DNA from: Macrostomum lignano
Lineage: Eukaryota
Length of the DNA: 64,000 bases
NCBI GenBank assembly: GCA_002269645.1
Contig: NIVC01001510.1
Span: 62,001-126,000, forward strand
Reading direction: 5' to 3'
Shown: positions 18,401 to 46,800 of the stretch, piece after piece
Position numbering within the stretch: position 1 is the first letter of the stretch
Layout of the letters: the number at the start of each line of letters is the position of its first letter
The notes under the pieces: model-generated
Seen by the model: only the letters and a program-made list of their open reading frames with translations
What the model was told of the DNA's origin: nothing
Database searches by the model: none
Position numbers and translations under genes: made by a program

Positions 18401-18711
18401 GCGCTACTTGAGTTATTTCCATCCACTTTTAAAGCTCAAAGTACGGTACGGTTGCACACCGCGCTCCTATTGCTTGGACTCTGGGTAGATGCAAGAGAGT
18501 AAAAGAGATTGCTGTCCAGAAATGGAGAGATGAAAAAGACTGGCGGCAATAGTGTGCGCAGCGACCCATTCTACCTTAGCAACAGCTGAGCTGCGGGACC
18601 GCCATGTGACTCATAAATCAGCTGTAATAATAGAGTCTCGGCCGCGATCTGAACTTGAAGTTTGATCTGAACTTGAAGTTTGATCTGAACTTGAGCGACA
18701 TGCTCAGCTAA

Positions 18712-21700
18712 ATGGGCTGCAATTCTAGTCGACCCGACAGCGGCGGCGGCGTAGCCGGAGTCCGCATACTGGACAATGACACTGTCGCTGTGGACGCCTT
18801 CGGCAACGCTGGAGGGGACGGCGATGACGAGTAGTAAGTCTTTGGCGAGAATTCATCATCGCAAAGGGAAATGTCTATGGTTGAATCCTAGCAGCTGCAA
18901 CTAAAGCTGCTGCTAAAGTTATGAGCAATCAAAGTGTAAAAATAAATGCAACGATTCAACGAATATCGGATGACCGGATAAGCTCGAGTTATTGAAATGA
19001 AAGTGGACCTGCTTGGACCTGCTTGTTCTCTTGGACGGCGTGTTAAGAATTCAGTTTTTAAGCCATTTGATGATGGAGAAAAAGGTGTTTTTGACACTAC
19101 CACACTAGAGGTAGGTAGTTAACACTAAACTAGGTAGTTAACACTACACTCGCTCACACAGGGTGTACAGCGGACCTGACTGTCTAATCTTCCGTCATGT
19201 ACACTCTCTGCTTTTGGGGTTGGCCCTCCTGTCGTGTAAATCGGCCAGCTTTTAGTGCACAAGCCCCAAATGAAAAGTGACCGCTCACCGAATCGAACCA
19301 GCTACGTCGTAAGCGTGAGAATCAGACGCGTTTACCGCTGACCGACTCCCTCCGAGGTGGAAGACAAGGTTCTGAGGTACATGCAGCATGTGCCTACATG
19401 TATTCAACCACTGTCTATGCAATGCCAATTAAGACAGCAGCATTTAGTCTAGCCTTATTTTCAACGAATTTCGTATTTATTGCGAATAACTGCAGTCTGA
19501 GTTTGCGATGAGGCGTCGCAGGTCTGTCAGTTTCAACCATACGAGCTACAATCAGAGAAAACTCAGAACCTTAAACTTGCGCTTAACTTGATGTCCACTA
19601 AAACGCTATAGAGAGACGTCCGGGAGAAAGTATCATTATTTAGTGAGGGAGTACAGGCCTATCAATGCAGTGCTTTAGTATCTGTGACCCTTTCGGTCCC
19701 CTCCAAAAATCTCTCTTGCAGCCCGACAGGCCCGGAGGACTACGAGTTCGGCGCGGGCGAAATCCCGCTAGACCGGTTCGCTTTGTCACCTGACCAGGAG
19801 GACTACGTGACGCCGCAGTACCTGCAGTCCATGCAGCGAGTCTACCAGGCCGAAGCGGCCAAGCAGGGCAGATTCGCACTGATAGAGAACGAGGAGGAGC
19901 GCCGGCCGCCACTGACGGACAAGGCGACGCTGGTGGCGCCCGAGCTGCTGGCCAGGGCCGACGCGATAGCCGACGCAACGCCGCTGGAGGTTGCCGGAGC
20001 CGGGTTTGACGTCCTGGTTGGCCACCTGTGCGACCAGGTGAAGATGGGAATCAGCCTGGCACTGGATTATACAAAATCCACTCCTAACTCTGGATTTCAA
20101 TAGATGAGTCACTGTCACCATGTGGTCCCTCTTCACAACTTAACACACTCTCCACTTTGACTTCAGGCCCTAGATAAGTAACTCACTTTTCCATTACTCT
20201 TTCGACAGCAAGATTGGTCACTCTTCACTCTCTGGTCACTCTTCACTCTCTGGTCACTGTTCACTCTCTAGTCACTCTTCACTCTCTAGTTACTCTTCCC
20301 TCTCTGGTCACTCTTCACTCTCTGGTCACTTTTCACTCTGTTGTCACTCTTCACTCTTTAGTTACTCTTCCCTCTCTGGTCACTCTTCACTCTCTGGTCA
20401 CTTTTCACTCTGTTGTCACTCTTTACTCTCTGGTCATTCTTCACTCTCTGGTCACTCTTCACTCTCTGATCACTCTTTACTCTCTGATCACTCTTTACTC
20501 TCTGGTCACTCTTCACTCTCTGGTCACTCTTCCCTCTCTGGTCACTCTTCACTTTCTGGTCACTCTTCACTCTCTGATCACTCATTACTCTCTGGTCACT
20601 ATTCACTCTCTGGTCACTCTTCACTCTCTGGTCACTCTTCACTCTCTGGTCACTCTTCACTCTCTGGTCACTCGTCACTCTCTGGTCACTCTTCACTCTC
20701 TGGTCACTCTTCACTCTCTGGTCACTCTTCACTCTCTGGTCACTCTTCAATTCTCAAGAAGTATTATAATAACTCTTTAGATCCTATGCGGATTAACAGA
20801 GCACACGATGACTAGGGTGTGGCACTCACTATGGGCATCCTAAAGATCCCAATGGCCACATCACAGCACTTTGCGGAGATAGCTATATACTCGTATACGA
20901 GTAACACGAGCTGAAACTCAAAAGACGCAGTAACTATATGGTAACTATATAGCAACTATATAGCAATGATGATGCCACATCGCCTCCTCCCCAGGTGAGC
21001 ACCGAACTAGAAGCAGTCCGAGTCCTGTTCCGTTGGATGGCGGTGACCGCCGGCAATCGTCGAGTTGATGCGCTGCTTGAAGGCGCCGAGACCACGCAGG
21101 AGGATCCGCTGCACTACATCCGCTGCATCAGGGAGGGCCGCGGCATCAACTACGTGCTGCTGCTGCACCGTCTGCTGCGGCATGCGGGCATCGCTGCAGA
21201 GGTCCGCCTTTTTTTACTATAGGGAGGAGAGAGAAACATATTTTTCTTTCCCTCTTTCTTTCAACACCGTCACCCAATCTGCTGTAGCCTCCACACCGTC
21301 ACCCAATCTGCTGTAGCCTTCTACACCGTCACCCAATCTGCTGTAGCCTTCCACACCGTCACCCTGTAGCCTCCAACACCGTCACCCAATCTGCTGTAGC
21401 CTCCAACACCGTCACCCAATCTGCTGTAGCCTCCACCGTCACCCAATCTGCTGTAGCCTCCACACCGTCACCCAATCTGCTGTAGCCTTCCACACCGTCA
21501 CCCTGTAGCCTCCAACACCGTCACCCAATCTGCTGTAGCCTCCAACACCGTCACCCAATCTGCTGTAGCCTCCAACACCGTCACCCAATCTGCTGTAGCC
21601 TTCAACACTGTCACCCAATCTGCTGTAGCCTTCAACACCGTCACCCAATCTGCTGTAGCCTCCAACACCGTCACCCAATCTGCTGTAGCCTTCAACACCG

Positions 21701-24700
21701 TCACCCAATCTGCTGTAGCCTTCAACACCGTCACCCAATCTGCTGTAGCCTCCAACACCGTCACCCAATCTGCTGTAGCCTCCAACACCGTCACCCAATC
21801 TGCTGTAGCCTCCAACACCGTCACCCAATCTGCTGTAGCCTCCAACACCGTCACCCAATCTGCTGTAGCTTCCAACTCCGTCAATCCTCACCAACGCTAT
21901 CAAATGCTATACATGTACCTCAGAATGTTAAACAGCTGTCTCAATACATGCATTGAGCTTTATATACCTGCAGGTCGTCGGCGGGGTCACCAAGGGCGCT
22001 CAGTATCGAATCGGGCACCACGTCAACGAGGATAACGCGTCCCTATGGCTGGCGGTGCTCGTTGAAGGCCAGTGGCGTCTCATTGACCCAATCTGGGCCT
22101 GTCAGGTGCTGCAGGTGAGTCGCTTTAACAAGCTTGTTTTCATAAGAACTGTGGGCGTTTCGGTACTAAACTGCATTGGAGATGTAGGAACCGTCCAGGT
22201 TTTGCAAAGTTGCAAGTGAATTGAAAAAGAGATTCTTCATAGGGCTTTAACTGTTTTACATGCAAATTTCTTTAACGAGGAAGCGCAGCTTTCGAGGTCT
22301 CGAAGTGCTCATTGTCAGGCCTTACTAAGTAGTTGTAGTCTGCAGGAAGCCTTTGCTTTGGAAGCCGCAAGGTGACGTCATTCTCATTCCGTTGACACCT
22401 GAGTGCGCACGCGCATACTTTGACCGTTATGGGGTTGCAACATCCACTAACCCCCAATTAATGTGACTGATATCGAATCCACTGGGCACTTTGGCTCATG
22501 ACTCTCATCACTCCAGGGCTACGACAGCGGAGAATGGAGCCGACTAGACGAAGCTGCCGCAGCCGCCGCAGCCTCCGACGCCGCGGCTGGCACCTCGGCA
22601 GCAGCAGCCGGGGAGGTCGGGTTCGCCATCAGCGAGTTCTACTTCCTGACTGACCCGCACTACGCGGTGCTGGAGCATTTCCCCTATGATCCCCGCTGGC
22701 AGCTGCTGCCCCGGCCAATCAGCCTTGAAGAATTCGAAGAGATGCCGCAGTGCGAGCCAGAGGAAATGGAGCGGCTCGGCCTGGAGATTGTCAGCCATCC
22801 GAAGTGCGTCTTCGAGATCCGCGACAGCGGCCTGTCGCAGCAGGAGCGCCGGCTGGGGCTGCACATCAAGAAGGGCCAGGACAACACGCTGGAGTTCCAG
22901 GAGGAGCCGCGCGAAGCCTTCGCCATCTACTCCGCCCGACTGTACATCCACGCCTCGGCGCTGAACTCGGAGGCCACCGGCAGCGAGATTCAATACAAAT
23001 CGCAGAAATGGCAGCTGGCGCACTTTTGCATCACGGGGCACAGCGTGAAGAAGCGAGAACTGTTCATCACCGTGATTCCACCAGTGGCTGGCAAGTTTCT
23101 ACTGAAACTATTCGGCGCCAGGTGCGCGGACAGCTGCCTGCGTCACGTGATCTCCTACGTGTTTCACTGCCGGCGCCCGGCCGAGGTGGCGCCCGTGCCG
23201 GCAGGCAACCTCACCGAGTGGGGACCGGGCGGCCAGACAGCCGAGGCGGGGCTGGACCCGCTGACCCACCCGGATCCCCTGGTGGAGACGGTGCGAGGCG
23301 AGGCGAGACTGCGCTTTGCGACTGAGAGTAACCACCTGCAGTACTCGGTGAGCTGGGCTGGCCTGCTGGGAGGCTCACTGCTCTCGTATAATGGTTGGTA
23401 AAACTGTAAGAAGTCCTTGACTCTAAGAAGTCCTTGAAGTACTACTCTAAAAAGTCATTGAAGGACCACTCAAAGAAGTCCTTGAAATACCACTAAGAAA
23501 ACCTTGAAAGACTTCTTTAAGAAGTCCTTGAAGCACCACCTGACTAAGCTCATGCTCTCGCCCATCCCATCAATCGACTATCCAGATTGAGCTCCGCAGC
23601 ACAGACAATGGCATCCGATTCCTTGAACTGTACAGCATTCACTGGATGGAGAACGGCGAGGCCGTGTTCCATCTGCGCGCGCCAAAGGAAGGCCTGTACG
23701 CAGCCTGCATCTCCTGTCGGCTGCCCAGCGGCCGGGTGGTGCCGGTCTGCGACTACCTCATCGACAGCCAGGCGCCCTGCCAGGATCCCGACTTCCTCTA
23801 CCCCCGGCTTAAAGAGCCGCTAGGCGTCAATTCGGACGCCTGTCGGAGTCTGGACACCGAGCCGCTGGCGCCTCATCAGTTTGGGTATTTGGAGTGCGCA
23901 ACTCGGACACTGCGCGTTGTCTGGCGCATGGGCCGGCCGCTACTCTACTGCGTCACAATGCGCCTGCAGGACCATCGGGGCCATCACGACTACACTGACC
24001 TCATCCTGGTGGAGACCAGCGTCGCCGAGGCCAGGGCCAGCGTCTCCATCAAGTTTCCCCAATACGGATATTATCACTTGGCCATCGGGGCCGCGCCAGA
24101 CTCGGGGAGCGAAAGCGCCAGGTGGGTAACTTGGTAGTAGAAATGTGAGATTGTGTAAAACTAATTTAGAAATAAGCCCGACCCGGTGTTTTGCAATTTT
24201 AGCTCAGATTTTAGTGACAAATTTCGGATCAGTAAGGAGATAAAAGAGCGAGAGAGATTGGGATGGAGATACATGGTGATGCTGAGAGGGAGGCGCTTTT
24301 ATCGCTGAGCTGCTCTGCCCCTTGAGAAATTTGAGAGAAATGCAGAGGAACATGGAAGGTGATGGAGAGGAGGCGAGAGAAACTGCTATTTAATGCAAGT
24401 CAACGCTGTCAAAAAACCTTAGGGAGGTCCGACACCTGTGCAATTACGTCATCAAATTCAACGGCGAGCCGTACGTTGACGCTACGCCGTTCCCTCGGCC
24501 AACGCCGCTTTGGCAGCGCGGCTTCCGGCTGATGTCGCCAGACAGCAGCCAGCTGGAGGCCGGCCGGTACGTGCAGATTGTGGTCAAAGCCGATCGGCGA
24601 GTGAAGTTCGGCCAGCTGCAGCTGCGGGTCGAGCGGCCCCAGCTGCTGATGTTCTACCTGCAGCGGGATGCGGACAATCCAGTCTACTGGAAGTCCACCA

Positions 24701-27700
24701 TCGATGCCGGGCCGCCTGGCGGAGTCTGGACTCTGTCCGCCCTGCCCGACCCGGACGATGTGGCCGGATCCGTGGCCGGACCGCTCATGCAGTTTCAGGT
24801 ACAAAAAAGGTTCAGGTAGCGAATAGGTCGCTGGAACCTGATCACCTGGCTTGGGTTTGCTATTTGAAGTCTCTCTTGCACTCTCATTTGGACTCTCTCC
24901 CTCCATTTGGATTCCCTCCCTTCTTTTGAAGTTTCTCTCCCTTCATTTGGATTCGCTCCCTTCATTTGGATTCGCTCCCTTCTTTTGAAGTTTCTCTCCC
25001 TTCATTTGGATTCGCTCCCTTCATTTGGATTCGCTCCCTTCTTTTGAAGTTTCTCTCCCTTCATTTGGATTCGCTTCCTTCATTTGGATTCGCTCCCTTC
25101 TTTTGAAGTTTCTCTCCCTTCATTTGGATTCGCTCCCTTCATTTGGATTCGCTCCCTTCATTTGGATTCGCTCCCTTCTTTTGAAGTTTCTCTCCCTTCA
25201 TTTGGATTCGCTTCCTTCATTTGGATTCGCTCCCTTCTTTTGCAGTTTCTCTCCCTTCATTTGGATTCGCTCCCTTCATTTGAAGTTTCTCTTTCTTCAT
25301 TTGGAGTTTCTCTTCCTTTATTTGGAGTTTCTCTTCCTTTATTTGAGTTACTTTCTCTTCATTTGGAGTTTCTCTTCCTTTACGAGTATTTGAGTTTCTC
25401 TCTTTTCATTTGGAGTTTCTCTTCCTTTACGAGTATTTGAGTTTCTCTCTTTTCATTTGGAGTTTCTTTTCCTTTACGAGTATTTGAGTTTCTCTCTTTT
25501 CATTTGGAGTTTCTTTTCCTTTACGAGTATTTGAGTTTCTCTCTTTTCATTTGGAGTTTCTCTCCCTTCATTTGAATATTTGGAGTTTTCTCCCTCCATT
25601 TTGATTCGCTCAATTTATTTGGTTCTCTCCTTTCATTTGGATTCGCTGCCTTCATTTAGACTCTCTCTTCTCTGCTTCAACGTCTCCAAACCCATTCGCC
25701 GCCGCTCGCAGGTCCTTGACGCCAAGGCGGAGGCGGACGCGCAGAAGCGCAGGGACGAATGGCAGGAGCTGCTAGAGTATTGCCGCAAACAGAACGCAGC
25801 CTACGAGGAGCGCCTGGTCCAGCTTGAGCAGATGGTGCGCGAACAGGCCCGGACTCTGGACGAGGTACTCGCCGAAGAGAGAATTCGCGTCTTAAGAGAG
25901 GCCGAGGATGGAGACGACGAAGCGATGGACCTTGATGAAGCGACTCTGGCTGATATTGAAGAACAGGTAAGATGCATTGAACTATCATAAACATGAACGA
26001 AAATGAGTCTCTGGCCTTGTAGCTCATTTATTATATTCGTATTAGCCAAAGCCTTAGGCCAGCTTGGGCAATTAAAAAATATTTACTTTCTTTCCTCTGG
26101 ATGTACGTTTGTTATCTTGCACTCTACCCCTTGACTGTACATTAAAGTTTTCTCTCTCTCCCCGACCGCTCGACGTGTACATTATTTATAGCCTCATTGC
26201 TAAACCTCGCAAGCCAAATTTGAGATAAACAAATTAAAGCGGGAAGGATTTTACTGTCTATCCCTCTCTAGATGTACATTCGTTACCTTCCGCTCTACCC
26301 CTTGACTGTACAATGAAGTCTTTCTTTACCTGGGCCTCGACCTCTGGCATGAATTAGTTCATTTTTTTGCCTCGTAGCTGAAATCAAGACTGGCAGGAAT
26401 TTAGCCCTCTGGATTTACATTCGTTATCTTTCATTCTACCCTTAACTGTACATTGGAGCTTTCTCCCCACCCAGACATAGTTCATAGCCTCGTGCGTGCG
26501 TCTTGCCAAACCTTGCAAGCCAAAGTCGAGATAAAGCAGGGGTACAGGAATCCTTTTTAACGTACGTCGGCTGTTTTCTCTAATCCTTGAAATATGTACA
26601 TTCATTCAAGGCCAAGATCCAGCTCGGCAAGGCAGGCAGCTCCGCCGATCCCGAGGAGCGCGCTAAGCGCGAACAGATCGCTCGAGACGCCGCTGTCCGC
26701 GTGGCAAAGTCGCGCCTTCGCGCCGCCATCCGGCAAGAAGATCTGGAAGGCATCGGGCGCGGACTGGACCGACTTCGCGAACTGGAGATTCAGGACGAAA
26801 AGCTGGTGGAACTGGCAGAGAGAACTGTGCGAATCACCGGCATAAAGAAGGGTGAGTTGGCTCTGTAACCTTTGTGAACTCGGAAATCTAGCATGACCCA
26901 ACCGAAATCTAGCATGACCCAACCGAAATCAAGCAAGACCCAACTGAAATCTAGCATGACCCAACTGAAATCTAGCATGACCCAACCGAAATCAAGCATG
27001 ACTCCAACTGAAATCAAGCATGACCCAGCCGAAATCAAGCATGACTCCAACTGAAATCTAGCATGACCCAATTGAAATCTAGCATGACTCCAACTAAAAT
27101 CAAGCATGACCCAACTGAAATCAAGCATGACTCCAACTGAAATCAAGCATGACCCAACCGAAATCAAGCATGACTCCAACTGAAATCAAGCATGACCCAA
27201 CTGAAATCAAGCATGACTCCAACTGAAATCAAGCATGACCCAACCGAAATCAAGCATGACTCCAACTGAAATCAAGCATGACTCCAACTGAAATCAAGCA
27301 AGACCCAACCGAAATCAAGCAAGACCCAACTGAAATCAAGCATGACTCCAACTGAAATCAAGCATGACTCCAACTGAAATCTAGCATGACTCCAACTGAA
27401 ATCAAGCATGACTCCAACTGAAATCAAGCATGACCCAAGCGAAATCAAGCATGACTCCAACTGAAATCAAGCATGACTCCAACTGAAATCAAGCAAGACC
27501 CAACCGAAATCAAGCAAGACCCAACTGAAATCAAGCATGACTCCAACTGAAATCTAGCATGACTCCAACTGAAATCAAGCATGACTCCAACTGAAATCTA
27601 GCATGACTCCAACTGAAATCAAGCATGACTCCAACTGAAATCAAGCATGACCCAACTGAAATCTAGCATGACTCCAACTGAAATCAAGCATGACCCAACT

Positions 27701-30149
27701 GAAATCTAGCATGACCCAACCGAAATCAAGCATGACCCAACCGAAATCTAGCATGACTCCAACTGAAATCAAGCATGACTCCAACTGAAATCTAGCATGA
27801 CTCCAACTGAAATCAAGCATGACTCCAACTGAAATCAAGCATGACCCAAGCGAAATCAAGCATGACTCCAACTGAAAACTAGCATGACCCAACTGAAATC
27901 TAGCATGACTCCAACTGAAATCAAGCATGACCCAACTGAAATCTAGCATGACCCAACCGAAATCAAGCATGACCCAACCGAAATCAAGCATGACCCAGCC
28001 GAAATCAAGCATGACTCCAACTGAAATCAAGCATGACCCAACCGAAATCAAGCATGACCCTGACCCAGTAACTCATGGTTCTAGATGTTTCCCAAGACAA
28101 TCAATTTTCAAGCCAATACGGAGGCGAACCTCGGTAAAAGTGCACTCAAATCGCGTCGCCATTTGATTATTCGCCCCCATTTTTCCAACCGCAGACCTGG
28201 CCTCGGCATCGGCTCAATCACTGAGCCAGCGGGCCGCTGGGCCGCTCCGGGCCGCCCTGGATCGGGCCAGAAAGACCGGCCTGCTGAAGGAGTCGCACCC
28301 CCTGCTGAGCGAAGCCGCCGCCGCCCTGGTCCGAGTGGACCGAATGGAGCGGCTCTACAAGCGGGTGCTCAGCCTGGATGGCAAGGCCGTGGCCGAACTG
28401 CGGGCCTACGTCAATCCCAAGCAGGCCATCGTTGACACGGTGCGGGCCACCCTGCTTCTGCTCGGCGAATACGAGAAGCGAACCAACGTGAGAGTGGCAG
28501 CTTTAATAGGCAGTTCCTTCAATAGACTGATTTATTCATGGGTTGTAGCCTAATGGTTAGAGGTCGTGGGTTCGATTCCCGATCTCACTGAAACAATTTG
28601 TGTCCTTGAGCAAGAAGCTTAACTCTGCATTGCTTCAGTTCACCCAGCTGTGAAATGGGTGTCAGCATTAGCTGGGGTAATTGAGGGTGTGTGGCGACCC
28701 CCCAGTCATTGGACTGAACAGTCGTACGCAGCCTTCAGATGCGCCGCGCAATAGCTGCGGCTGAGCTGTCGGTTTCACATCTGCCCTAATTGGAGCAGGT
28801 GTAGCCGCATGTGCCACTCATGCCAGCAGAATTCCTTTCGTGAACCTCAAATTATTGTGAAATCAAACCCCATCTATCCTATCCGCAAAAGTTTAACACT
28901 TTTCGCACAAAAGCAGAGATGAAAAATAAATCAATATGAATCAAACTTTTGATGCTCCCAAACCAGAGCTGGCAGAAGTGCCTCCGCTACCTGAATCCCA
29001 CTGGCAAGACGAGCATGCAGCAGCGCATCGCCCAGTTCAGCCCAGCCTCCGGCCTGCACCCCAGCATCGCCGCCAGGGCGAAAGTGATGCTGGCGCCCTA
29101 CAGCGAGGAGGAAGTCATCCAGAGTAGCGCTGCCGCTGCCGCCTTTTTCTCCTGGGTGAGCGGGTCAAGCTGTCTGTGGGTCAAGCTGTCTGTGGGTCAA
29201 GCTGTCCTGTGGGTCAAGCTGTCCTGTGGGTCAAGCTGTCCTGTGGGTCAAGCTGCTGTGGGTCAAGCTGCCTGTAGGTCAAGCTCTCTGTGGGTCAAGC
29301 TGTCTGTGGGTCAAGCTGTCCTGTGGGTCAAGCTGCCTGTGGGTCAAGCTGTCTGTGGGTCAAGCTGTCTGTGGGTCAAGCTGCCTGTGGGTCAAGCTGT
29401 CCTGTGGGTCAAGCTGTCTGTGGGTCAAGCTGTCTGTGGGTCAAGCTGCCTGTGGGTCAAGCTGTCCTGTGGGTCAAGCTGTCTGTAGGTCAAGCTGTCT
29501 GTGGGTCAAGCTGTCTGTGGGTCAAGCTGTCTGTGGGTCAAGCTGCCTGTGGGTCAAGCTGCCTGTGGGTCAAGCTGCCTGTGAGTCAAGCTGTCTATGG
29601 GTCAAGCTGCCTGTGGGTCAAGCTGTCTGTGGGTCAAGCTGTCTGTGGGTCAAGCTGTCCTGTTAGTCAAGCTGTCTGTAGGTCAAGATGTCTGTGGGTC
29701 AAGCTGCCTGTGGGTCAAGCTGTCTGTAGATCAAGCTGTCTGTGGTTCAAACTGTCTGTGGGTCAAGCTGTCTGTAGGTCAAGCTGTCTGTGGGTCAAGC
29801 TGCCTGTGGGTCAAGCTGTCTGTGGGTCAAGCTGCCTATGGGTCAAGCTGCCTGTGGGTCAAGCTGTCCTGTGGGTCAAGCTGTCCTGTGGGTCAAGCTG
29901 CCTGTGGGTCAAGCTGTCCTGTGGGTCAAGCTGTCTCTGGGTCAAGCTGGCCTGATGGACGCTAATAAATGACGAAATCAGAAAAACCGCTTTTCACTAC
30001 AGAGTCTGGGCACGGTGATCGAATCCGAAGAGAGCAGCAATCCACGCGACTTTCAGCCGGCCAACATCGAGCGACAGCGGAAACTGCTGGGCGTCTCCAA
30101 GGAGGAGCACAGCAGGCTGCTCTGGGAGGGCAGCGGCGGAAGGAAGTGA
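18712..30149 (+). CDS. Hillarin/KY/LTD-1-like transglutaminase-fold protein, ~1217 aa, 12 exons; MGCxxS N-terminus, pseudo-TGase core, KY-type beta repeats, coiled coil, C-terminal dynein-MTBD-like domain
   Basis: Exons 18712-18833, 19722-20037, 20995-21201, 21974-22114, 22517-23347, 23586-24121, 24423-24798, 25712-25966, 26611-26851, 28195-28487, 28967-29155, 30003-30149. All junctions are GT..AG and phase-compatible (3654 nt). Family-type motifs: ELEAVRVLFRWM, LWLAVLVEGQWRLIDPIW, EFYFLTDP..EHFPYDPRWQLLPRPISLEEFE, GKFLLKLFG, YLIDS, YGYYHLAI. Confidence 0.88.
20213..20750. repeat. Intronic 18-nt minisatellite (tggtcactcttcactctc)
   Basis: Directly visible, in intron 2 of the TGase-like gene. 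Confidence 0.95.
21262..21885. repeat. Intronic 30-nt minisatellite (caccgtcacccaatctgctgtagcctccaa)
   Basis: Directly visible, intron 3. Confidence 0.95.
24880..25660. repeat. Intronic composite pyrimidine-rich minisatellite (ttcatttggattcgctccc / tttgaagtttctctccc variants)
   Basis: Directly visible, intron 7. The unit changes gradually along the array. Confidence 0.9.
26095..26520. repeat. Three degenerate ~150-170-bp tandem copies (tgtacattcgttatct..ctctaccccttgactgtacatt..)
   Basis: Copies start near 26101, 26273 and 26413, in intron 8. Confidence 0.7.
26883..28060. repeat. Intronic 21-nt minisatellite (gaaatcaagcatgactccaact-type)
   Basis: Directly visible, intron 9. Confidence 0.95.
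28541..28715 (+). mobile_element. tRNA-derived SINE with CORE/Meta-like central domain (internally shortened head)
   Basis: GGTTGTAGCCTAATGGTTAG (A box) and GGGTTCGATTCC (B box), then gtgtccttgagcaag...ttgcttcagttcacccagctgtgaaatgggt. A homologous copy lies at 44082-44232 on the minus strand. Confidence 0.8.
29161..29950. repeat. Intronic 16-17-nt minisatellite (gggtcaagctgtctgt)
   Basis: Directly visible. It starts 5 nt after the donor of intron 11. Confidence 0.95.
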
Positions 30150-30221
30150 CGATTTGGGCTTGTTCATCCATGGACTCTCTCATTGATCCGGACTCTCTCA
30201 CTCATTGATCTGGACTCTCTC

Positions 30222-30366
<145 letters not shown>

Positions 30367-31052: not shown

Positions 31053-32900
31053 TCACTTGGCTGACTTCTTCACCTCTAGCTCGTCTATTGTCCAGAGGTC
31101 GATGAAATTCTTCCTGGCCTTCTTCTTCACCTTGGTGGCGTCCTTCTGCTTTTTAACCATGAACTCTTTGGCGTCCCTGAAGTAGCTGGGCGGATAGGCC
31201 CGCCAGCCCCTGGACGAGCCGTGCGTGCCGCCCTCGTCGTCGGAGGTGAGGCGCTGGTCCACCCGCTCGGCCGGGATGGTCTGCTGCTCCTGGTTCATGG
31301 TCTGCATGCTGAGGCGCAGCCTGGCCTCCAGGTACTCGTTCTTCCACTTGCAGTACTCCAGCGTGGTGACGCCGGCTTTGTCGTCCAGATCGATTCGATA
31401 CTTCATCATCTGCTGGATGGCCTTGGCAAAGCGGCCGCGCTCCCACAGCCGGGGCAGCTTGTTCTTGAACAGCTCGGTGGCGGCTGGCTGCTGCTTGTCG
31501 TACTTGCTGCCAGAGGTCTGCAGGAACGGCGGGAAACTCTTGTCGGCGACAGTGGACGACATCAGCAGAGTTGGGATGTTCCTCAGCATGTGCTGCAGAT
31601 CGTTCGGCTGGATGAACGGACCGTCGATAAGGTGCGACATGTAGTAGGAGATGTTTACAGCGGGCTCCTTGGAGAAGACGTACAACAGGCTGGTGTCTGT
31701 CAGGATGTCCATGATGAGGTGGATGATGCTGTGCTTCAGCGATTCGACATTTCTGTCGGCGGCCAGCACCAGGAAGTAGTGCAGCAAGGCGAGAATGTTG
31801 TCGTAATCGTAGATAGACGTCTTGTGGCCGTTCTGCTCAACGTAGTCAGACGAATTGATTTCGGTGGAGTTCACTATGGGCGACAGGTTGATGAAGCGCT
31901 CCTCCAGGCTGCTGAGAATCACCAATCGAAATTCTGGATTGAGCGATTTTGACGTCTGCGACACAAAGTAGCGCTCCTTCTGGAAGACGCGAACAAACGG
32001 TATGATCTGGGGCATGATTCTCAACGGGTCCTTGTGCAGGAAGAGTTTGCACAGCATGCGGCGCGGGTAGGACCGATACACAATCACCGCCCGTTCGTCC
32101 TGATCTGGCGAAGCCCACGGAGCGTTATAATAGCGACAGTTAATGGGCTGGTAGAACACTTTGTCGCCCAGGTAGAAATTGACGTGAGCAGCCTTGTTGA
32201 GCATGTTAACTAGCATAGAGATTTTCGTGTAGGGCCGTTCGTCTAGCAGCGACCAGGCGTATTCCATCCAGTCGCTGAATTTCCTAGAGAAATTGTAGTT
32301 CCGCCGGAAATAGTAGATGCAGAACTGGCTGCGCGGCGCCCAAGAGCCGAAACGGAACAGCGACGGGATGGCGAAATAGGCCTCCCTACGCATCATGATC
32401 GTGGGGATGTTGAAAGTGATGAGGTCGCCAAACGAGTGGTCGTGAACGTAGGTGGCGTACTGCGGAATGGACACCTCGCTCATGGCCTCGTAGCTGGCCG
32501 CGTTGTCGATTTTGCCAACCCGAATCGGCGCCAGGACGCGAACGATTGTCTCGCATTTGAAGTAGAGCGCCACCGAGAAGATGTTGAGAAACAGGTAGGC
32601 CTTCTCGTTGAACATCGGCCGGTCCATGGGCGACTTTGGATTGTAGAGCGACGGCTTGTCCAAGATTTGAAAGTACATGTACTTGAAGAAGATGTTCATC
32701 CGCTCTCGGGTCTTCAGAATGTTCACCAAAGGCGTGGCGTCGCCCGAGCGCACGCGGTTGATGATCCACAGCGTGTTGGGGTGCAGGGCGGGGAAGTACG
32801 GCCGGATGGCGGTGTACGCGTACTCGCCTGCCGAGGCGCCGACGCCTTCGATCTGCAGCCGGTAGACCTTCGGCACCTGCGGCTTCTGTATCGACTGCAT
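31053..32900 (-). CDS. Intronless 615-aa protein of unknown function (possible very degenerate ankyrin-like segments)
   Basis: 1848-nt ORF with strong GC3 bias and a non-repetitive, protein-like sequence. A pyrimidine-rich acceptor (ttactttctcAG) lies 8 nt upstream of the ATG. No family recognised with confidence. Confidence 0.88.
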   Translation of the reverse strand: MQSIQKPQVPKVYRLQIEGVGASAGEYAYTAIRPYFPALHPNTLWIINRVRSGDATPLVNILKTRERMNIFFKYMYFQILDKPSLYNPKSPMDRPMFNEKAYLFLNIFSVALYFKCETIVRVLAPIRVGKIDNAASYEAMSEVSIPQYATYVHDHSFGDLITFNIPTIMMRREAYFAIPSLFRFGSWAPRSQFCIYYFRRNYNFSRKFSDWMEYAWSLLDERPYTKISMLVNMLNKAAHVNFYLGDKVFYQPINCRYYNAPWASPDQDERAVIVYRSYPRRMLCKLFLHKDPLRIMPQIIPFVRVFQKERYFVSQTSKSLNPEFRLVILSSLEERFINLSPIVNSTEINSSDYVEQNGHKTSIYDYDNILALLHYFLVLAADRNVESLKHSIIHLIMDILTDTSLLYVFSKEPAVNISYYMSHLIDGPFIQPNDLQHMLRNIPTLLMSSTVADKSFPPFLQTSGSKYDKQQPAATELFKNKLPRLWERGRFAKAIQQMMKYRIDLDDKAGVTTLEYCKWKNEYLEARLRLSMQTMNQEQQTIPAERVDQRLTSDDEGGTHGSSRGWRAYPPSYFRDAKEFMVKKQKDATKVKKKARKNFIDLWTIDELEVKKSAK

Positions 32901-33969
32901 GACGACAACTGAGAAAGTAAAGCTGGCCGCTCACTCTGCTGGGCCTCCACTGCTGTGCTTGGCTGGTGCAAGTTCTGGCTTCGGCTGTTTGCCGCTAAAC
33001 TTAGTTAAAGTCTAATACTTTTCAGACTTTTATTAACAAGTTAGCTATAATGCTTTTTTAGCAGTGCGCTCCTGGCTCTTTAGTACTGAACTATTCGATT
33101 CCAAGTTGGGCCATAGACGGCTGGCCGAGCACGTCTCAACGGAATGACCCTGAGGCATCGATTCCGATATGCAAAACTCCCCGCCCCTGGGGACCGGGGC
33201 GCCTAATTCGGGCGGGATTTGGCTTGTCTGGGATGGCAATAGAGAGAGAGAAAAGTTAATCAAATTAGCCATCTTGTCCAGCACCGGAGTCGGGAGTGTA
33301 ATGCTCATCCCCCCAACTCTGCTGTAGTTGCTGGGAGGACTCAAATCGGTGGAAAAATTTCAGGATCCACAGAAAGTCTGCATTGAATTTGCATTCTGCG
33401 ACTCCCTGAGGGTCTGGGGGTTGGGGGGAGGGGGGTTCGAACCCAAAGCCCTCGGGCGAATGCCCAGTTCGGCAATTAATTCGCGAATGCGAACTGCAGT
33501 CTCAGGCTCGAATCATTTTTCCGAGGTGTACTTTCGAACAAAAAAGACGCGTTAATTAGTTGGGTATTTATTTGCATGGGAAACATTCGATATTCGAAAC
33601 GAATATTTCGCAACAAAGAGTACTGTTAAAAAGGCCTTTGTTTCATTGTATTAAGCCTATTGAGGTAGTCGGGTAAACCAATTGATATGCACTTGCAATT
33701 CTGACGCTATTCGATATGCCGCTTCAGTTTAATATTGAAATAAATTTATAACAAATTTAAATATATAGTCGTAATCATGCGAGCACTACATGTAGCAGTT
33801 CTCGCTAAAAGAATAAACATGATTCATCCAGTTCGCGGAAAACAGTTGTCAGCTGATACATAAAAACCGCATTAGAAAGAAGCTTTAATAAAACGAGGAG
33901 GACTTGAGTGCTGCAATGAGTAAAACTTTTATTCATTTAATCCATGCTTTTACAGACCAAAAAGGGCCA

Positions 33970-43800: not shown

Positions 43801-46800
43801 GAGGGAAATCCCATGCCTAAAATTGCAATTTCAATTTGCAGCACAGCTCAGGAGCTTTGGGCGTGGCTAGTTGGTCGGAGGCTGAATAAACTAACCAACC
43901 CAACAGCCGCTAAAAACTACTTGACTTCAGGTCAAAAGCAATTTATCCGAATCACATGTATGATTAAAAGCTACTTTCGATACATGTCGGGACAGGTTAC
44001 TGGTAGCTCAAAGTGCAAAACCGAATAAACCGTCTGTAATGCTCCTTTCTATAAAAAGAAATAATAATTGTGCACACCTGCGCTAATGCTGGCACCCATT
44101 TTACAGCTGGGTGAACTGAAGCAATGCGGAGCTAAGTTCGGCTCAAGGATACAAATTGTTCCGAATGGGCCGAGAATCGAACCCCCGACCTCCCAGTCAT
44201 GAGTTCGACGCTCTGACCACTAAGCTACAACCCTCTTATGCATCTTTTCGATACATATAGGGATAAGGCCTAAGCAGCTTAAAGCGTATAACCAAAATAG
44301 GTTCTTACTGTAAAAGTATTTTTCGATACATATCGGGAGAGTCGCATAATATCATGAAGCATACATTTAGCGCTAAAATAAGCCCCTCACTGGAATGCAA
44401 CTTTCGATACATATCGGGATGCAAAACTGCAAAACTGACCTGCACGCCACCCTCGTCCGAGTGGCTGTTAGAAGGCGAAGCTTCAGCCGAGTCCCTGCCG
44501 CCGCCGCCGCCCTGAATCAGGAGCGTCGGCACTTGGACGCTGCCCGCAACGGACGCGGCAGCGGAGGCCGACACGCCGCTGGGCACGGCGGCGCCGGCCG
44601 GGTTGGCAGCCGCGTGAGAGTGGTGCGAGTGCTCAGCCAGCAGGTGGGCATCGAGCAGCGAGGCCTGGGAGCCGCGGTGAATGTGCAGGCCGCAGGCCTT
44701 CAGAATGTCCAGCTTGCACAGCGGACAGGAGCGCTGGTCCAGCAGCCACGGATCGATGCAGGATTTGTGATAGAAATGCCTGGGTGGGTTGGGGGTGGAG
44801 TATTGTTAGGGTTCTTGTCGCTTCCGCATATAGATCGGCCTTTCAAAATCTCATTGCCAACAGATCTCAAAATCTCATTACCAACAGATCCCAAAATCTC
44901 ATTGCCAACAGATCTCAAAATCTCATTGCCAACAGATCTCAAAATCTCATTGCCAACAGATCTCAAAATCTCATTGCCAACAGATCTCAAAATCTCATTG
45001 CCAACAGATCTCAAAATCTCATTGCCAACAGATCTCAAAATCTCATTGCCAACAGATCTCAAAATCTCATTGCCAACAGATCTCAAAATCTCATTGCCAA
45101 CAGATCTCAAAATCTCATTGCCAACAGATCTCAAAATCTCATTGCCAACAGATCTCAAAATCTCATTGCCAACAGATCTCAAAATCTCATTGCCAACAGA
45201 TCTCAAAATCTCATTGCCAACAGATCTCAAAATCTCATTGCCAACAGATCTCAAAATCTCAAAGACAATCCAGCTCACCTGCAGGGCAGGATTCGAACCG
45301 ACTCGCCGCACCTGTAGGGCTCAATGCAAACGGCGCACTGATCCCCAATCCAGTCGAAATCCTGGCAAAGCGAAGCATTTTTGGAGGTGCGAGGTATTTT
45401 TAAAAACAAAATTCAAGTCTTTAAAGGTAGCGCGCAGGGATCCCCGATTAAGGCTCAGAACATCAAGGAATTCCAACAATTTGTCGACTTTCCCGTCAAA
45501 AGAAAATTCCCCATAATTCCTAGTAGTCCGATTGAAAAAATTCGAACCTCGCACCGCACTATCTGTTTAGCTCTGTTTGAGCAGATCCGCGTAATTAAAA
45601 GCCGGAATAGCGGCTCAGCAGCCGCAGCCTCTCTCTGCCCCGCCTTTCAGCTGCTGTTGCGCACGAATGAAGGATTACAGTACGAGTATAAGGACAGAAC
45701 AAGAAGGAAGAAGTCCGCCTCTCCTCTCAGAGTCCCAGAAATGCGAGCCGCTGCAGATTCACATAGGCCTTCTCTCTCTCCATCTACTCCTAGCTCTCTC
45801 ATAAAGATAAGCCTCTAGTTAATTAAAGCATAGAAAGGCGTTAGTTGCAGAATAATGCGCCCGTGCCTGTCCCTGCTCATCCAAGCTCACTCTGCCACTC
45901 TCGTCAAGCTTAAGCCCTTCAGCTGCCCGACCTTTTCAGTTGGCAAAAAAGTCCGCCGATGAGATGAAAGACAACAGGAGATGAAGCCGAATTTCCTGTA
46001 CCTGAGCGCAAGCAGAAAATCTCCAAGTCTTTCTGCTTTTTTTCTTCTTCTAGACGAAAATATGATGAAAAAATCAATGAAAATTGGGGTGGCTTAGAAG
46101 ATTACGGACTAACGGACGGTTTATCTTTAGCAGGACTTATTAACCCGTGTTCCAAAATAATTTCTTTCGTGTGCTCTTTTAGAAGCCAAAGAACTGAAGC
46201 TGCTTTTGCTCGATTTTAATTAAAAGAAACATAAATAATGAGGCCGTTTGAACAGGAGAAATTAAAGCCTATAAAAATCTCCAGGCTCTTAATAAGATTT
46301 ATTTATCGATCTATCTATCGTATACCTTCAAAAGAGTTTGTTTGCGCTACAAAGTTACTCAATCAACTTTGAGACTAGCACCCTTGTTTTCTCTGTAAAA
46401 AGCGCTCTACGCTACATATTGGCAAGACTGTCAATATTGAAGATACTTATATGCTACGGGCTGCTGCATAAAATCACTCAGAAAATATTGCCTTATAATT
46501 TTTTAGCGCTACATATCGGCAAGTAAGCAAAATGAAAAATATTGATAGCATTAAGCTACAAAACTCACCTTGTCGCCAGTCTTGAGCACCTTGACGGGGA
46601 TTTTTGTCAGCGCCTTCTTCGCCGCGGTACCCAGCCGACGCTGAAATTCGGGGAGGAGGGAGAGTGCGAGCCGGGGGTCAATGGGGGGGGGGTCGACGCT
46701 GAAATGCCAGAAACAACAATTTATAAGAAAAAAGGGAAGCTATGTACTCAATCGTATTGATATATCTTTTCCTCTTGAGGCAGAATAAACTATTATCCAG

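What the first reader, a model, noticed from the sequence alone, without database searches (positions are those of the whole stretch)
18712..30149. Lipid-anchored transglutaminase-like scaffold ending in a stand-alone dynein-type microtubule-binding domain
Seen in sequence: the spliced C-terminus (exons 28195-28487, 28967-29155, 30003-30149) reads VLSLDGKAVAELRAYVNPKQAIVDTVRATLLLLGEYEKRTNSWQKCLRYLNPTGKTSMQQRIAQFSPASGLHPSIAARAKVMLAPYSEEEVIQSSAAAAAFFSWSLGTV and is preceded by long helical/coiled-coil exons. Established: the dynein heavy-chain stalk-tip MTBD has the pattern (V/L)xS(I/L)xxxx(L/I)xE(V/L)RSxxNPPxAV...LLLGE...DW...I.xF...Y..E.V...S.A...W (recalled), which matches position by position. 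No AAA domains are present. Inference: with an MGC membrane anchor at the other end, the protein could tether membranes to microtubules (cilia, axon, muscle or cleavage furrow), reusing the dynein MTBD outside a motor.
Basis: partly seen in the sequence, partly recalled or inferred. Interest (0 to 1): 0.75.

Follow-up and report, generated by a model that had tools for sequence, protein, structure and literature searches.

The report
Dynein microtubule-binding domain on non-motor protein
A flatworm gene encodes a probably lipid-anchored, catalytically dead transglutaminase-like scaffold whose last ~115 residues are a true relative of dynein's microtubule-binding tip with no motor or stalk; the same architecture recurs in molluscs, annelids, a brachiopod and amphioxus and I found no published description of it.

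Summary
My 12-exon, all GT-AG model (1217 aa) is identical to an annotated Macrostomum lignano protein named only hypothetical / transglutaminase-like.

The window's own C-terminal sequence gives no Pfam or PDB hit. It does find 300 relatives. A profile of 67 of them hits only dynein heavy chains in the PDB, at their microtubule-binding domain (MTBD), with E down to 7.7e-14.

An AlphaFold model (pLDDT 95) superposes on solved dynein MTBDs at TM 0.64-0.82. The next, non-dynein folds score TM 0.32 or less.

The H1 glutamate that pairs with alpha-tubulin R403 in dynein is invariant in the family.

There is no AAA+ ring and no returning stalk helix. The domain sits at the end of a helical rod, 37 residues from the C-terminus.

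Upstream are an MGCNSS start (myristoylation/palmitoylation consensus), a transglutaminase-like core lacking the catalytic Cys and His, and three KY-type Ig-like domains.

The fusion is conserved: 37 of 48 long relatives are KY/hillarin-like.

The membrane-to-microtubule tether is the most likely function, but it is inferred and untested.

The parts
18712..30149 (+). Whole gene: 12 coding exons, 1217 aa. Exons are 18712-18833, 19722-20037, 20995-21201, 21974-22114, 22517-23347, 23586-24121, 24423-24798, 25712-25966, 26611-26851, 28195-28487, 28967-29155 and 30003-30149.
   Evidence: All introns are GT-AG and the frame is continuous. The translation is identical to M. lignano PAA56306.1/PAA67065.1.
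18712..18732 (+). Start codon and MGCNSSR: N-myristoylation consensus (Gly2, Ser6) with Cys3 as a candidate palmitoylation site.
   Evidence: Read directly from the sequence. An in-frame TAA lies immediately upstream of the ATG. 23 of 150 relatives also begin with MG and fit the pattern G-{EDRKHPFYW}-x-x-[STAGCN]-{P}; many begin MGCGSS. Lipidation itself is inferred.
20035..22090 (+). Transglutaminase-like core, residues 146-254 (end of exon 2, exons 3-4). By motif alignment the catalytic Cys and His positions are Gly196 and Ser238, and Asp253 is kept, so this is a pseudo-enzyme.
   Evidence: Pfam PF01841, E 1.1e-5, 26.1 bits against a cut-off of 23. Column composition across 48 relatives shows no Cys or His at these positions.
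22724..24798 (+). Three KY-type immunoglobulin-like domains, at about residues 332-488, 506-610 and roughly 640-843 (exons 5-7).
   Evidence: Pfam PF23265 Ig-like_KY, E 7.8e-26, 3 stretches. The limits of the third domain are approximate.
25712..28367 (+). All-helical rod, residues 844-1066 (exons 8-9 and the first part of exon 10). Its last helix continues into MTBD helix H1, which is the position of CC1 in dynein.
   Evidence: AlphaFold model of the last 374 aa, pLDDT 92.8, with seven helices before the MTBD. The rod does not superpose on the dynein stalk.
28368..30035 (+). Dynein-type microtubule-binding domain, residues 1067-1180 (end of exon 10, exon 11, start of exon 12).
   Evidence: Family profile against the PDB: the top 60 hits are all dynein heavy chains at the MTBD, best E 7.7e-14. 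AlphaFold pLDDT 95.4. Foldseek: the top 31 hits are all dynein MTBDs, TM 0.64-0.82. BLASTP E 8e-5. 29 of 67 relatives hit Pfam PF12777.
28395..28397 (+). Codon for Glu1076, invariant in the family. It aligns with dynein H1 Glu (mouse E3304), the only acidic residue in mouse H1. On that basis I equate it with Dictyostelium E3390, the reported partner of alpha-tubulin R403.
   Evidence: hmmalign column: 67 of 67 are Glu. The role of the dynein residue comes from Uchimura et al. 2015, PMC4298687.
30036..30146 (+). C-terminal tail, residues 1181-1217, with the motif PANIERQRKLLG and two short helices. It stands where dynein has the long returning CC2 helix.
   Evidence: pLDDT above 90 up to about residue 1213. 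Related tails in P0003, P0011, P0008 and P0004.

Best explanation
The gene encodes a 1217-residue non-motor protein of the KY/hillarin kind.

Shown:
- It has a transglutaminase-like core that has lost the catalytic Cys and His, so it is a binding module and not an enzyme.
- Three KY-type Ig-like domains follow, then a helical rod of about 220 residues.
- At the very C-terminus is a domain homologous in sequence and fold to the microtubule-binding domain at the tip of the dynein stalk.
- There is no AAA+ ring and no returning coiled-coil helix. The ATP-driven registry shift that switches dynein's microtubule affinity therefore cannot operate here.

Inferred:
- The MGCNSS N-terminus is myristoylated on Gly2 and palmitoylated on Cys3, which would place the N-terminus on the cytoplasmic face of a membrane.
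- The basic C-terminal domain (pI 9.8) binds the microtubule lattice at the tubulin intradimer groove as dynein does, using the invariant H1 Glu/Arg pair plus a family-specific basic loop (TGK...R).
- The protein is therefore a passive, fixed-affinity tether or spacer between a membrane and microtubules. The dead transglutaminase and Ig-like domains would recruit other partners.
- The domain was most likely captured from a dynein heavy-chain gene in an early animal, because the same fusion is found in flatworm, molluscs, annelids, a brachiopod and amphioxus.

The confidence of 0.6 is for the whole statement. The architecture and the homology to the dynein MTBD are near certain (about 0.95). 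The membrane-to-microtubule tether function is about 0.5.
For: Gene model; identical to a database protein.

Homology to the dynein MTBD:
- Family profile of 67 sequences against the PDB: all 60 listed hits are dynein heavy chains, aligned at the MTBD, E 7.7e-14 to 8e-5.
- 29 of 67 relatives hit Pfam PF12777, best E 6e-7.
- Pairwise BLASTP with the mouse MTBD, E 8e-5.
- A dynein-only profile hits residues 1065-1171 at E 8e-4, with no hit among 2000 shuffles.

Fold: AlphaFold pLDDT 95.4, pTM 0.89. The top 31 Foldseek hits are all dynein MTBDs (TM 0.64-0.82, rmsd 1.5-5.5 A; 1.5-3.9 A for the top ten); the next folds have TM 0.32 or less and probability 0.1 or less.

No motor and no stalk: Pfam on the full protein finds only Ig-like_KY and Transglut_core. 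The domain ends 37 residues before the stop, and within about 40 residues of the C-terminus in most relatives. The upstream rod does not superpose on the dynein stalk.

Interface:
- Glu1076 is invariant and aligns with the dynein H1 Glu that pairs with alpha-tubulin R403.
- Arg1078, aligned with mouse R3306, is basic in 82% of the family.
- Net charge is +6 and pI 9.8, against +4 and 9.2 for the mouse MTBD.

Conservation of the fusion: 37 of 48 long relatives carry Ig-like_KY and 22 carry Transglut_core. Species are listed.

Lipid-anchor consensus: shared by 23 relatives.

Context from papers: leech hillarin sits at the axon hillock and Drosophila hillarin at the cleavage furrow (PMC3081291; PMC3718969). 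Inactive transglutaminase-like domains act as peptide-binding modules (PMC3495828).
Against: - No experiment bears on microtubule binding or lipidation.
- The window's own domain gives no Pfam hit at E up to 1 and no dynein hit by single-sequence PDB search.
- The dynein H6 arginine (mouse R3382), by residue spacing the likely equivalent of the Dictyostelium R3469 that Uchimura et al. pair with alpha-tubulin E416, is Gln in the window and mostly Asp in the family consensus. The H1 lysines K3298/K3299 are Asp/Gly here.
- In dynein, strong binding needs a particular CC1/CC2 registry. What replaces that here is unknown, and I could not inspect the model coordinates.
- The transglutaminase active-site assignment rests on a motif alignment, not on a structure.
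Confidence: 0.6

Rival explanations
1. The fold is dynein-derived but the ligand has changed. The domain would bind something other than the microtubule lattice, for example septin filaments (a hillarin partner in flies), free tubulin or tubulin tails, or another protein. The protein would then be a cortical scaffold that does not touch microtubules directly.
For: Several dynein tubulin-contact positions are not conserved: the H6 Arg is Gln or Asp, and the H1 Lys-Lys is Asp-Gly. The family has its own conserved features that dynein lacks, namely the TGK loop, an RR pair at the start of H4, and a tail motif. D-hillarin is reported to interact with the septin Pnut (cited in PMC3718969, and PMC3081291).
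Against: The one invariant surface-type residue of H1 is exactly the Glu that contacts alpha-tubulin R403 in dynein, and the neighbouring Arg is kept. The domain remains strongly basic like an MTBD. The fold is preserved at TM about 0.8 over the whole domain. The fly septin interaction was described for a protein that, as far as I know, lacks this domain; I did not test that here.
Confidence: 0.22
2. Ciliary variant of the tether: the protein links the ciliary or peri-ciliary membrane to axonemal doublets or rootlet microtubules in multiciliated epidermis, rather than acting at the general cell cortex or in neurons.
For: The best PDB matches of the family profile include axonemal inner-arm dyneins: a Chlamydomonas flagellar dynein-size AAA+ chain of 4191 aa (8glv_Fm), DNAH6 and DNAH2. 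The H1 motif LDxxxIxEI(R/K)S(F/Y)xxPP resembles theirs. The named relatives come from animals with abundant motile epithelial cilia (flatworm, molluscs, annelids, brachiopod, amphioxus). None of the 30 names I looked up was an arthropod, nematode or vertebrate. A weak, non-significant hit of the transglutaminase core is to FAP246 of the Chlamydomonas central apparatus (E 1.4).
Against: Yeast and mouse cytoplasmic dynein MTBDs score almost as well. I named only 30 of 300 relatives, so the taxon pattern is anecdotal. There are no expression or localisation data. Leech hillarin is neuronal.
Confidence: 0.15
3. Artefact or relic: the C-terminal exons belong to a separate gene or a decaying fragment, and the fusion is a gene-prediction chimera.
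For: Introns of 0.5-1.3 kb filled with minisatellites separate the last exons. One database isoform (P0152) skips 14 residues of the last MTBD helix.
Against: Splice phases are consistent across all 11 introns. The same N-to-C architecture recurs in independently annotated genomes from four phyla. The helical rod and MTBD fold as one confident unit. Core residues are intact, with the invariant E, W and W all present.
Confidence: 0.03

Closest known systems
Microtubule-binding domain of dynein heavy chains (Pfam PF12777 'MT' region; PDB 3ERR, 6RZB, 6KIO, 3WUQ)
   Same: The same small helical fold, with TM 0.64-0.82 to solved MTBDs. Profile-level sequence homology, E 7.7e-14. Shared core signature L-x-E-(I/V)-(R/K)...NP/PP...LLLGE...W...F...S-x-A...W. 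The H1 Glu/Arg pair is conserved. The overall charge is basic. The preceding helix runs into H1 as CC1 does.
   Different: There is no AAA+ ring, linker or tail. There is no antiparallel stalk: CC2 is replaced by a 37-residue tail, so the affinity cannot be switched by helix sliding. Extra residues lie between H2/H3 and H3/H4 (the conserved TGK loop). The H6 Arg and the H1 Lys-Lys contacts are not conserved. The window copy falls below Pfam detection.
KY (kyphoscoliosis peptidase) / hillarin / LTD-1 family of transglutaminase-like proteins with KY-type Ig-like ('W180') domains
   Same: A Transglut_core followed by the FYFLTDP...WQLL segment and repeated Ig-like_KY domains. Relatives are named 'KY', 'Kyphoscoliosis peptidase' and 'hillarin-like' by their sources. 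A leech (Helobdella) protein of 1194 aa has the same MGCGSS...MTBD layout.
   Different: From my own knowledge and not tested here: fly D-hillarin and worm LTD-1 carry N-terminal LIM domains, and vertebrate KY is short; none is described with a C-terminal MTBD. Here the N-terminus is a lipidation motif. The catalytic Cys and His are absent throughout the MTBD-bearing set.
Cyk3 and other catalytically dead transglutaminase-like scaffolds (Rad4, CC2D2A, CEP76)
   Same: A transglutaminase-like domain without the catalytic Cys, thought to act by binding and not by catalysis, in cytoskeletal, cytokinetic or ciliary settings (PMC3718969; PMC3495828).
   Different: Different domain partners (SH3 in Cyk3, C2 in CC2D2A). 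None has a dynein MTBD.
Non-motor membrane-to-microtubule linkers (for example CLIMP-63 and spectraplakins), by analogy only
   Same: The proposed job: one end on a membrane or the cortex, the other on the microtubule lattice.
   Different: No homology. Those proteins use unrelated microtubule-binding modules. This comparison rests on my own knowledge and not on a test.

Membership tests
Dynein-type MTBD (domain level) | Compact helical bundle H1-H6 that superposes on solved dynein MTBDs | tested here: met
   AlphaFold pLDDT 95.4. The top 31 Foldseek hits are all dynein MTBDs, TM 0.64-0.82. The next, non-dynein folds have TM 0.32 or less.
Dynein-type MTBD (domain level) | Significant sequence-profile relationship to dynein MTBDs | tested here: met
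   Family profile against the PDB, E 7.7e-14, with all 60 listed hits being dyneins. The reverse dynein profile gives E 8e-4. BLASTP gives E 8e-5.
Dynein-type MTBD (domain level) | Match of the window's own sequence to Pfam PF12777 (MT) | tested here: not met
   No Pfam family at E up to 1 for the 209-aa C-terminus or at E up to 0.1 for the 133-aa domain. 29 of 67 relatives do match, best E 6e-7.
Dynein-type MTBD (domain level) | Conserved H1 glutamate that pairs with alpha-tubulin R403 | tested here: met
   Glu1076 aligns with mouse E3304 and is Glu in 67 of 67 family members. The role of the residue comes from PMC4298687.
Dynein-type MTBD (domain level) | Conserved H6 arginine (mouse R3382) and the H1 Lys-Lys tubulin contacts | tested here: not met
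   Gln1158 in the window, and mostly Asp at that column in the family with Arg one position earlier. K3298/K3299 align with Asp/Gly.
Dynein-type MTBD (domain level) | Binds microtubules | not testable with these tools
   This needs co-sedimentation, TIRF or cryo-EM.
Dynein heavy chain (protein level) | Six AAA+ modules, a linker, and an antiparallel CC1/CC2 stalk carrying the MTBD | tested here: not met
   Pfam finds only Ig-like_KY and Transglut_core in the 1217 aa. Only 37 residues follow the domain. The rod does not superpose on the stalk. The protein is not a dynein.
KY / hillarin-like transglutaminase-like proteins | Transglutaminase-like core domain | tested here: met
   PF01841, 26.1 bits against a cut-off of 23, residues 146-254.
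KY / hillarin-like transglutaminase-like proteins | KY-type Ig-like (W180-type) domains after the core | tested here: met
   PF23265, 91.2 bits against a cut-off of 27, three stretches.
KY / hillarin-like transglutaminase-like proteins | Intact Cys-His-Asp catalytic triad (needed for an active peptidase or transglutaminase) | tested here: not met
   By motif alignment the positions are Gly196, Ser238 and Asp253. None of the 48 relatives has Cys or His at those columns. The weak FAP246 alignment places its His opposite Ser238. This rests on motifs and has not been checked on a structure.
KY / hillarin-like transglutaminase-like proteins | N-terminal LIM domains (as in D-hillarin and LTD-1) | tested here: not met
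   No LIM match in the Pfam scan. The N-terminus is MGCNSS.
Dually acylated (myristoyl + palmitoyl) membrane-anchored proteins | Met-Gly start fitting G-{EDRKHPFYW}-x-x-[STAGCN]-{P}, with Cys at position 3 | tested here: met
   MGCNSSR. The pattern is shared by 23 relatives. Actual acylation cannot be tested here.

The most novel reading that the evidence does not exclude
A widespread class of non-motor microtubule-associated proteins has gone unrecognised. These proteins use a dynein MTBD that was captured from a heavy-chain gene and freed from the stalk and ATPase. In the KY/hillarin-like branch the domain is coupled to a lipid anchor, giving a static membrane-to-microtubule tether conserved from flatworms to amphioxus. 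This would explain why hillarin concentrates at the axon hillock, where microtubule bundles begin. It would also give a natural 'locked' MTBD for studying dynein-tubulin recognition without registry switching.
Probability: 0.45. Interest if true: 0.8.

Novelty: new variant of a known kind. Interest (0 to 1): 0.66.

Why it matters
To my knowledge the dynein MTBD has been treated as a part peculiar to dynein heavy chains, and its affinity as something set by the stalk and the ATPase.

Finding it as a portable module changes that picture. It occurs at the end of non-motor proteins, in at least 300 clusters of sequences at 50% identity. Most long members are KY/hillarin-like scaffolds, and a few are CLCA+VWA, CARD or EF-hand fusions.

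This gives a candidate new family of microtubule-associated proteins. It also gives a concrete, testable mechanism for the poorly understood hillarin/KY-like proteins of invertebrates: membrane anchor, binding scaffold, rod, microtubule foot.

Finally, it offers a natural experiment on which MTBD residues matter once registry control is removed. The H1 Glu/Arg pair stays, the H6 Arg goes, and a new basic loop appears.

The gene is in public databases only as a hypothetical or transglutaminase-like protein.

Tried and rejected
- Direct Pfam scan of the C-terminal 209 aa: no family at all.
- Direct phmmer of the same sequence against the PDB: only chance-level hits (Pumilio, AtsK), no dynein.
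- The search for homologous proteins with the C-terminus and with the transglutaminase/Ig region: zero hits. The likely reason is that poly-Ala words swamped the word index. With the family profile it returned only 9 short unnamed metagenome fragments.
- The exhaustive HMMER search was what opened the family.
- Literature searches for hillarin, KY or LTD-1 together with dynein or MTBD found no description of this domain. Zhang and Aravind 2012, on ciliary transglutaminase-like domains, does not mention hillarin, KY or an MTBD.
- I asked whether the upstream helices mimic the dynein stalk. The 374-aa model matches dyneins only over the MTBD part (TM about 0.3, rmsd 20-45 A over longer alignments), so I rejected that idea. 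I had no access to the model coordinates, so I could not see what the C-terminal tail packs against.
- I looked for a second copy of the domain in the window and found none.
- Single-sequence PDB search with the transglutaminase core gave only a non-significant hit to FAP246.
- I considered a gene-model chimera and rejected it on the conserved architecture.
Full report

Yes. Translating the three stated exons gives the quoted peptide. Exon 28195-28487 is entered in phase 1: the previous exon ends ...AAG G|GTGAGT, and the G joins AC to make Asp.

I extended the model upstream by open frames and splice signals. Twelve exons from the ATG at 18712 to the TGA at 30147-30149, all with GT-AG introns, give a continuous 1217-codon frame. 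An in-frame TAA sits directly before the ATG.

An exhaustive HMMER search then returned a database protein of exactly 1217 aa. My translation is identical to Macrostomum lignano PAA56306.1/PAA67065.1 and differs at two residues from PAA59878.1. The window is therefore flatworm DNA and the gene model is independently supported. Sources name the protein only 'hypothetical protein' or 'Transglutaminase-like domain-containing protein'.

**2. What the N-terminal three quarters are.**

Pfam finds a transglutaminase-like core (residues 146-254, 26.1 bits against a cut-off of 23) and three stretches of the KY-type Ig-like domain PF23265 (91 bits). It finds nothing else, in particular no AAA module.

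I aligned the classical transglutaminase-like motifs (G-x-C...R-x-x-G-I and H-x-W...D) by hand. This puts Gly196 at the Cys position and Ser238 at the His position, while Asp253 is kept. The same columns hold no Cys or His in any of 48 relatives. This is a motif-based inference.

It matches the known class of dead transglutaminase-like binding modules such as Cyk3 and Rad4 (PMC3718969; PMC3495828).

The N-terminus MGCNSSR fits the N-myristoylation pattern and has Cys3. Twenty-three of the 150 listed relatives start in the same way, many as MGCGSS. Lipidation is inferred, not shown.

**3. What the C-terminus is.**

On its own the window's sequence is too diverged for the libraries. It gives no Pfam hit at E up to 1 and no dynein hit by phmmer against the PDB.

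A directed BLASTP against the mouse cytoplasmic dynein MTBD does align the whole domain: 26% identity over 110 columns, E 8e-5. I had first confirmed that sequence as PDB 3J1T.

The exhaustive search with the last 209 residues found 300 proteins at E up to 1e-3 and 83 at E up to 1e-10. None is of dynein size.

I aligned the domain from 67 of them (A1) and searched the PDB with the profile. All 60 listed hits are dynein heavy chains, and the four alignments printed cover the end of CC1 and the MTBD. They include:

| Hit | E-value |
|---|---|
| Chlamydomonas flagellar chain 8glv_Fm (deposited as 'AAA+ ATPase domain-containing protein', 4191 aa) | 7.7e-14 |
| DNAH6 | 3.7e-13 |
| yeast Dyn1 | 6.6e-13 |
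| mouse DYNC1H1 | 1.2e-11 |

.

Twenty-nine of the 67 relatives hit Pfam PF12777 individually, best E 6e-7. In the reverse direction, a profile of four dynein MTBDs finds residues 1065-1171 of the window protein at E 8e-4, with no hit among 2000 shuffles.

AlphaFold with A1 gives pLDDT 95.4 and pTM 0.89. Foldseek against the PDB returns dynein MTBDs as the top 31 hits (TM 0.64-0.82; rmsd 1.5-3.9 A for the top ten). The next folds have TM 0.32 or less and probability 0.1 or less. Homology to the dynein MTBD is established.

**4. How it differs from the dynein MTBD.**

- *No returning stalk.* The domain ends 37 residues before the stop codon. In most relatives it lies within about 40 residues of the C-terminus. 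There is no long returning helix (CC2), hence no antiparallel stalk.
- *A different support.* A model of the last 374 residues (pLDDT 92.8) shows a rod of seven helices leading into H1, and two short, confident helices in the tail. Foldseek matches it to dyneins only over the MTBD part.
- *A partly kept interface.* Column by column, the family-invariant residues are Glu1076, Trp1108 and Trp1169, aligned with mouse E3304, W3333 and W3393. Arg1078, aligned with R3306, is basic in 82% of members. The H1 glutamate is reported as the only acidic MTBD residue at the interface, pairing with alpha-tubulin R403 (Uchimura et al. 2015, PMC4298687).
- *Lost contacts.* The H6 arginine (mouse R3382) is Gln here and not conserved in the family. 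The H1 Lys-Lys, of which K3299 lies near beta-tubulin D427 (Lacey et al. 2019, PMC6629372), is Asp-Gly.
- *New features.* The family has a near-invariant G(K)TGK loop between H3 and H4 and an RR pair at the start of H4 (Gln-Arg in the window).
- *Charge.* The domain is basic, pI 9.8 and net +6, against 9.2 and +4 for the mouse MTBD.

**5. The fusion is conserved.**

Of 48 long relatives carrying the domain, 37 have Ig-like_KY and 22 have Transglut_core. Two are CLCA+VWA proteins, two carry CARD and one carries EF-hands.

Named sources cover several groups:
- Molluscs: Pinctada, Lottia, Patella, Nucella, Mizuhopecten, Pecten and Argopecten ('hillarin-like'), Sinanodonta, Gigantopelta.
- Annelids: Helobdella, Owenia, Dimorphilus.
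- A brachiopod: Lingula.
- Amphioxus ('KY').

Many shorter relatives are just a helical region plus the domain, including a 250-aa M. lignano paralogue, P0003, at 41% identity. One relative is an intronless gene on a Tara Oceans scaffold. None of the names I saw mentions dynein or microtubules.

**6. Mechanism.**

Shown: the domain order is lipidation motif, dead transglutaminase-like core, three Ig-like domains, helical rod, dynein-type MTBD. No ATPase or stalk is present.

Inferred: the N-terminus is acylated and sits on a membrane, the C-terminal domain binds the microtubule lattice with a fixed affinity, and the middle recruits partners. The protein would be a passive membrane-to-microtubule tether.

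Reported localisations of hillarins fit such a role: the axon hillock in leech and the cleavage furrow in fly. Those reports do not test it, and I did not verify that those particular proteins carry the domain.

Rivals:
- A changed ligand (0.22).
- A specifically ciliary tether (0.15, a variant of the main idea).
- A prediction artefact (0.03).

**7. Novelty.**

The gene is deposited but uncharacterised. I found no paper or source name describing a dynein MTBD in KY/hillarin-like proteins or in any non-dynein protein. I could not consult InterPro or Gene3D, which may already flag it.

I rate it a new variant of a known kind: a known domain in a new, motor-less context that defines a probable new family of microtubule-associated proteins.

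Interest is 0.66. The homology is solid and would surprise a cytoskeleton specialist. The function is untested.

Noticed in passing
window 20215-20749, 21262-21883, 24862-25568, 26883-28060, 29162-29949, 30215-30362: Five of the gene's eleven introns consist largely of long minisatellite arrays: an 18-bp unit x30, 30-bp x21, 47-137-bp units, 22/43-bp x55 and 16-bp x49, all about 90% matching. A (CT)74 tract lies just past the stop codon. These arrays create long spurious open frames on both strands.
   Followed up: partly
window 18700-18711: A four-codon upstream reading frame, ATG CTC AGC TAA, ends exactly at the main ATG and is in frame with it.
   Followed up: no
window 31056-32930 (- strand): A 625-codon uninterrupted open frame lies convergent with the gene's 3' end. 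It has ordinary composition and no Pfam match. It may be an uncharacterised single-exon gene or a mobile-element ORF.
   Followed up: partly
window 44308-44805 (- strand): An open frame whose first ~30 residues match the C-terminal part of RING-finger models (zf-RING_2, E 1e-5, 26.1 bits, just under the 27.3-bit cut-off). It is probably an exon of a RING E3 ligase gene.
   Followed up: no
window 1293-2998: Long open frames made almost entirely of Thr/Pro or His/Asp/Asn/Ser repeats on the + strand. Repetitive DNA, not examined further.
   Followed up: no
window 29114-29155 (residues 1156-1169): A database isoform (P0152, UniRef A0A1I8HX99, 1203 aa) lacks these 14 residues. This is consistent with an alternative GT donor at 29114. 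It would remove most of the last MTBD helix, including the invariant Trp1169, so it is either a mis-prediction or a domain-disabling splice form.
   Followed up: partly
relatives P0062 (437 aa) and P0114 (281 aa): Proteins with three and two tandem copies of the MTBD-like domain and little else. For P0062, the only one looked up, the source is a JGI metagenome contig of 1.6 kb.
   Followed up: no
relative P0002 (Pinctada imbricata, 1437 aa): This protein carries three MTBD-like copies (582-731, 980-1136, 1286-1429), and its sequence shows the N-terminal and transglutaminase-like stretches recurring between them. It looks like a tandem gene array merged into one model.
   Followed up: no
relatives P0110 (Branchiostoma, 'calcium-activated chloride channel regulator 1-like', 1480 aa); two CARD-matching relatives: The same C-terminal domain is also appended to CLCA+VWA proteins. 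Two long relatives also match CARD, and amphioxus P0015 and P0022 show a similar extra module before the helical rod, though I did not confirm they are the CARD hits. The domain therefore behaves as a mobile module.
   Followed up: partly
window residues 209-261 of the protein (genome about 21183-22111): The transglutaminase core's only PDB hit is FAP246 of the Chlamydomonas ciliary central apparatus (7N6G), at E 1.4, which is not significant. FAP246 keeps the His where the window protein has Ser238.
   Followed up: no
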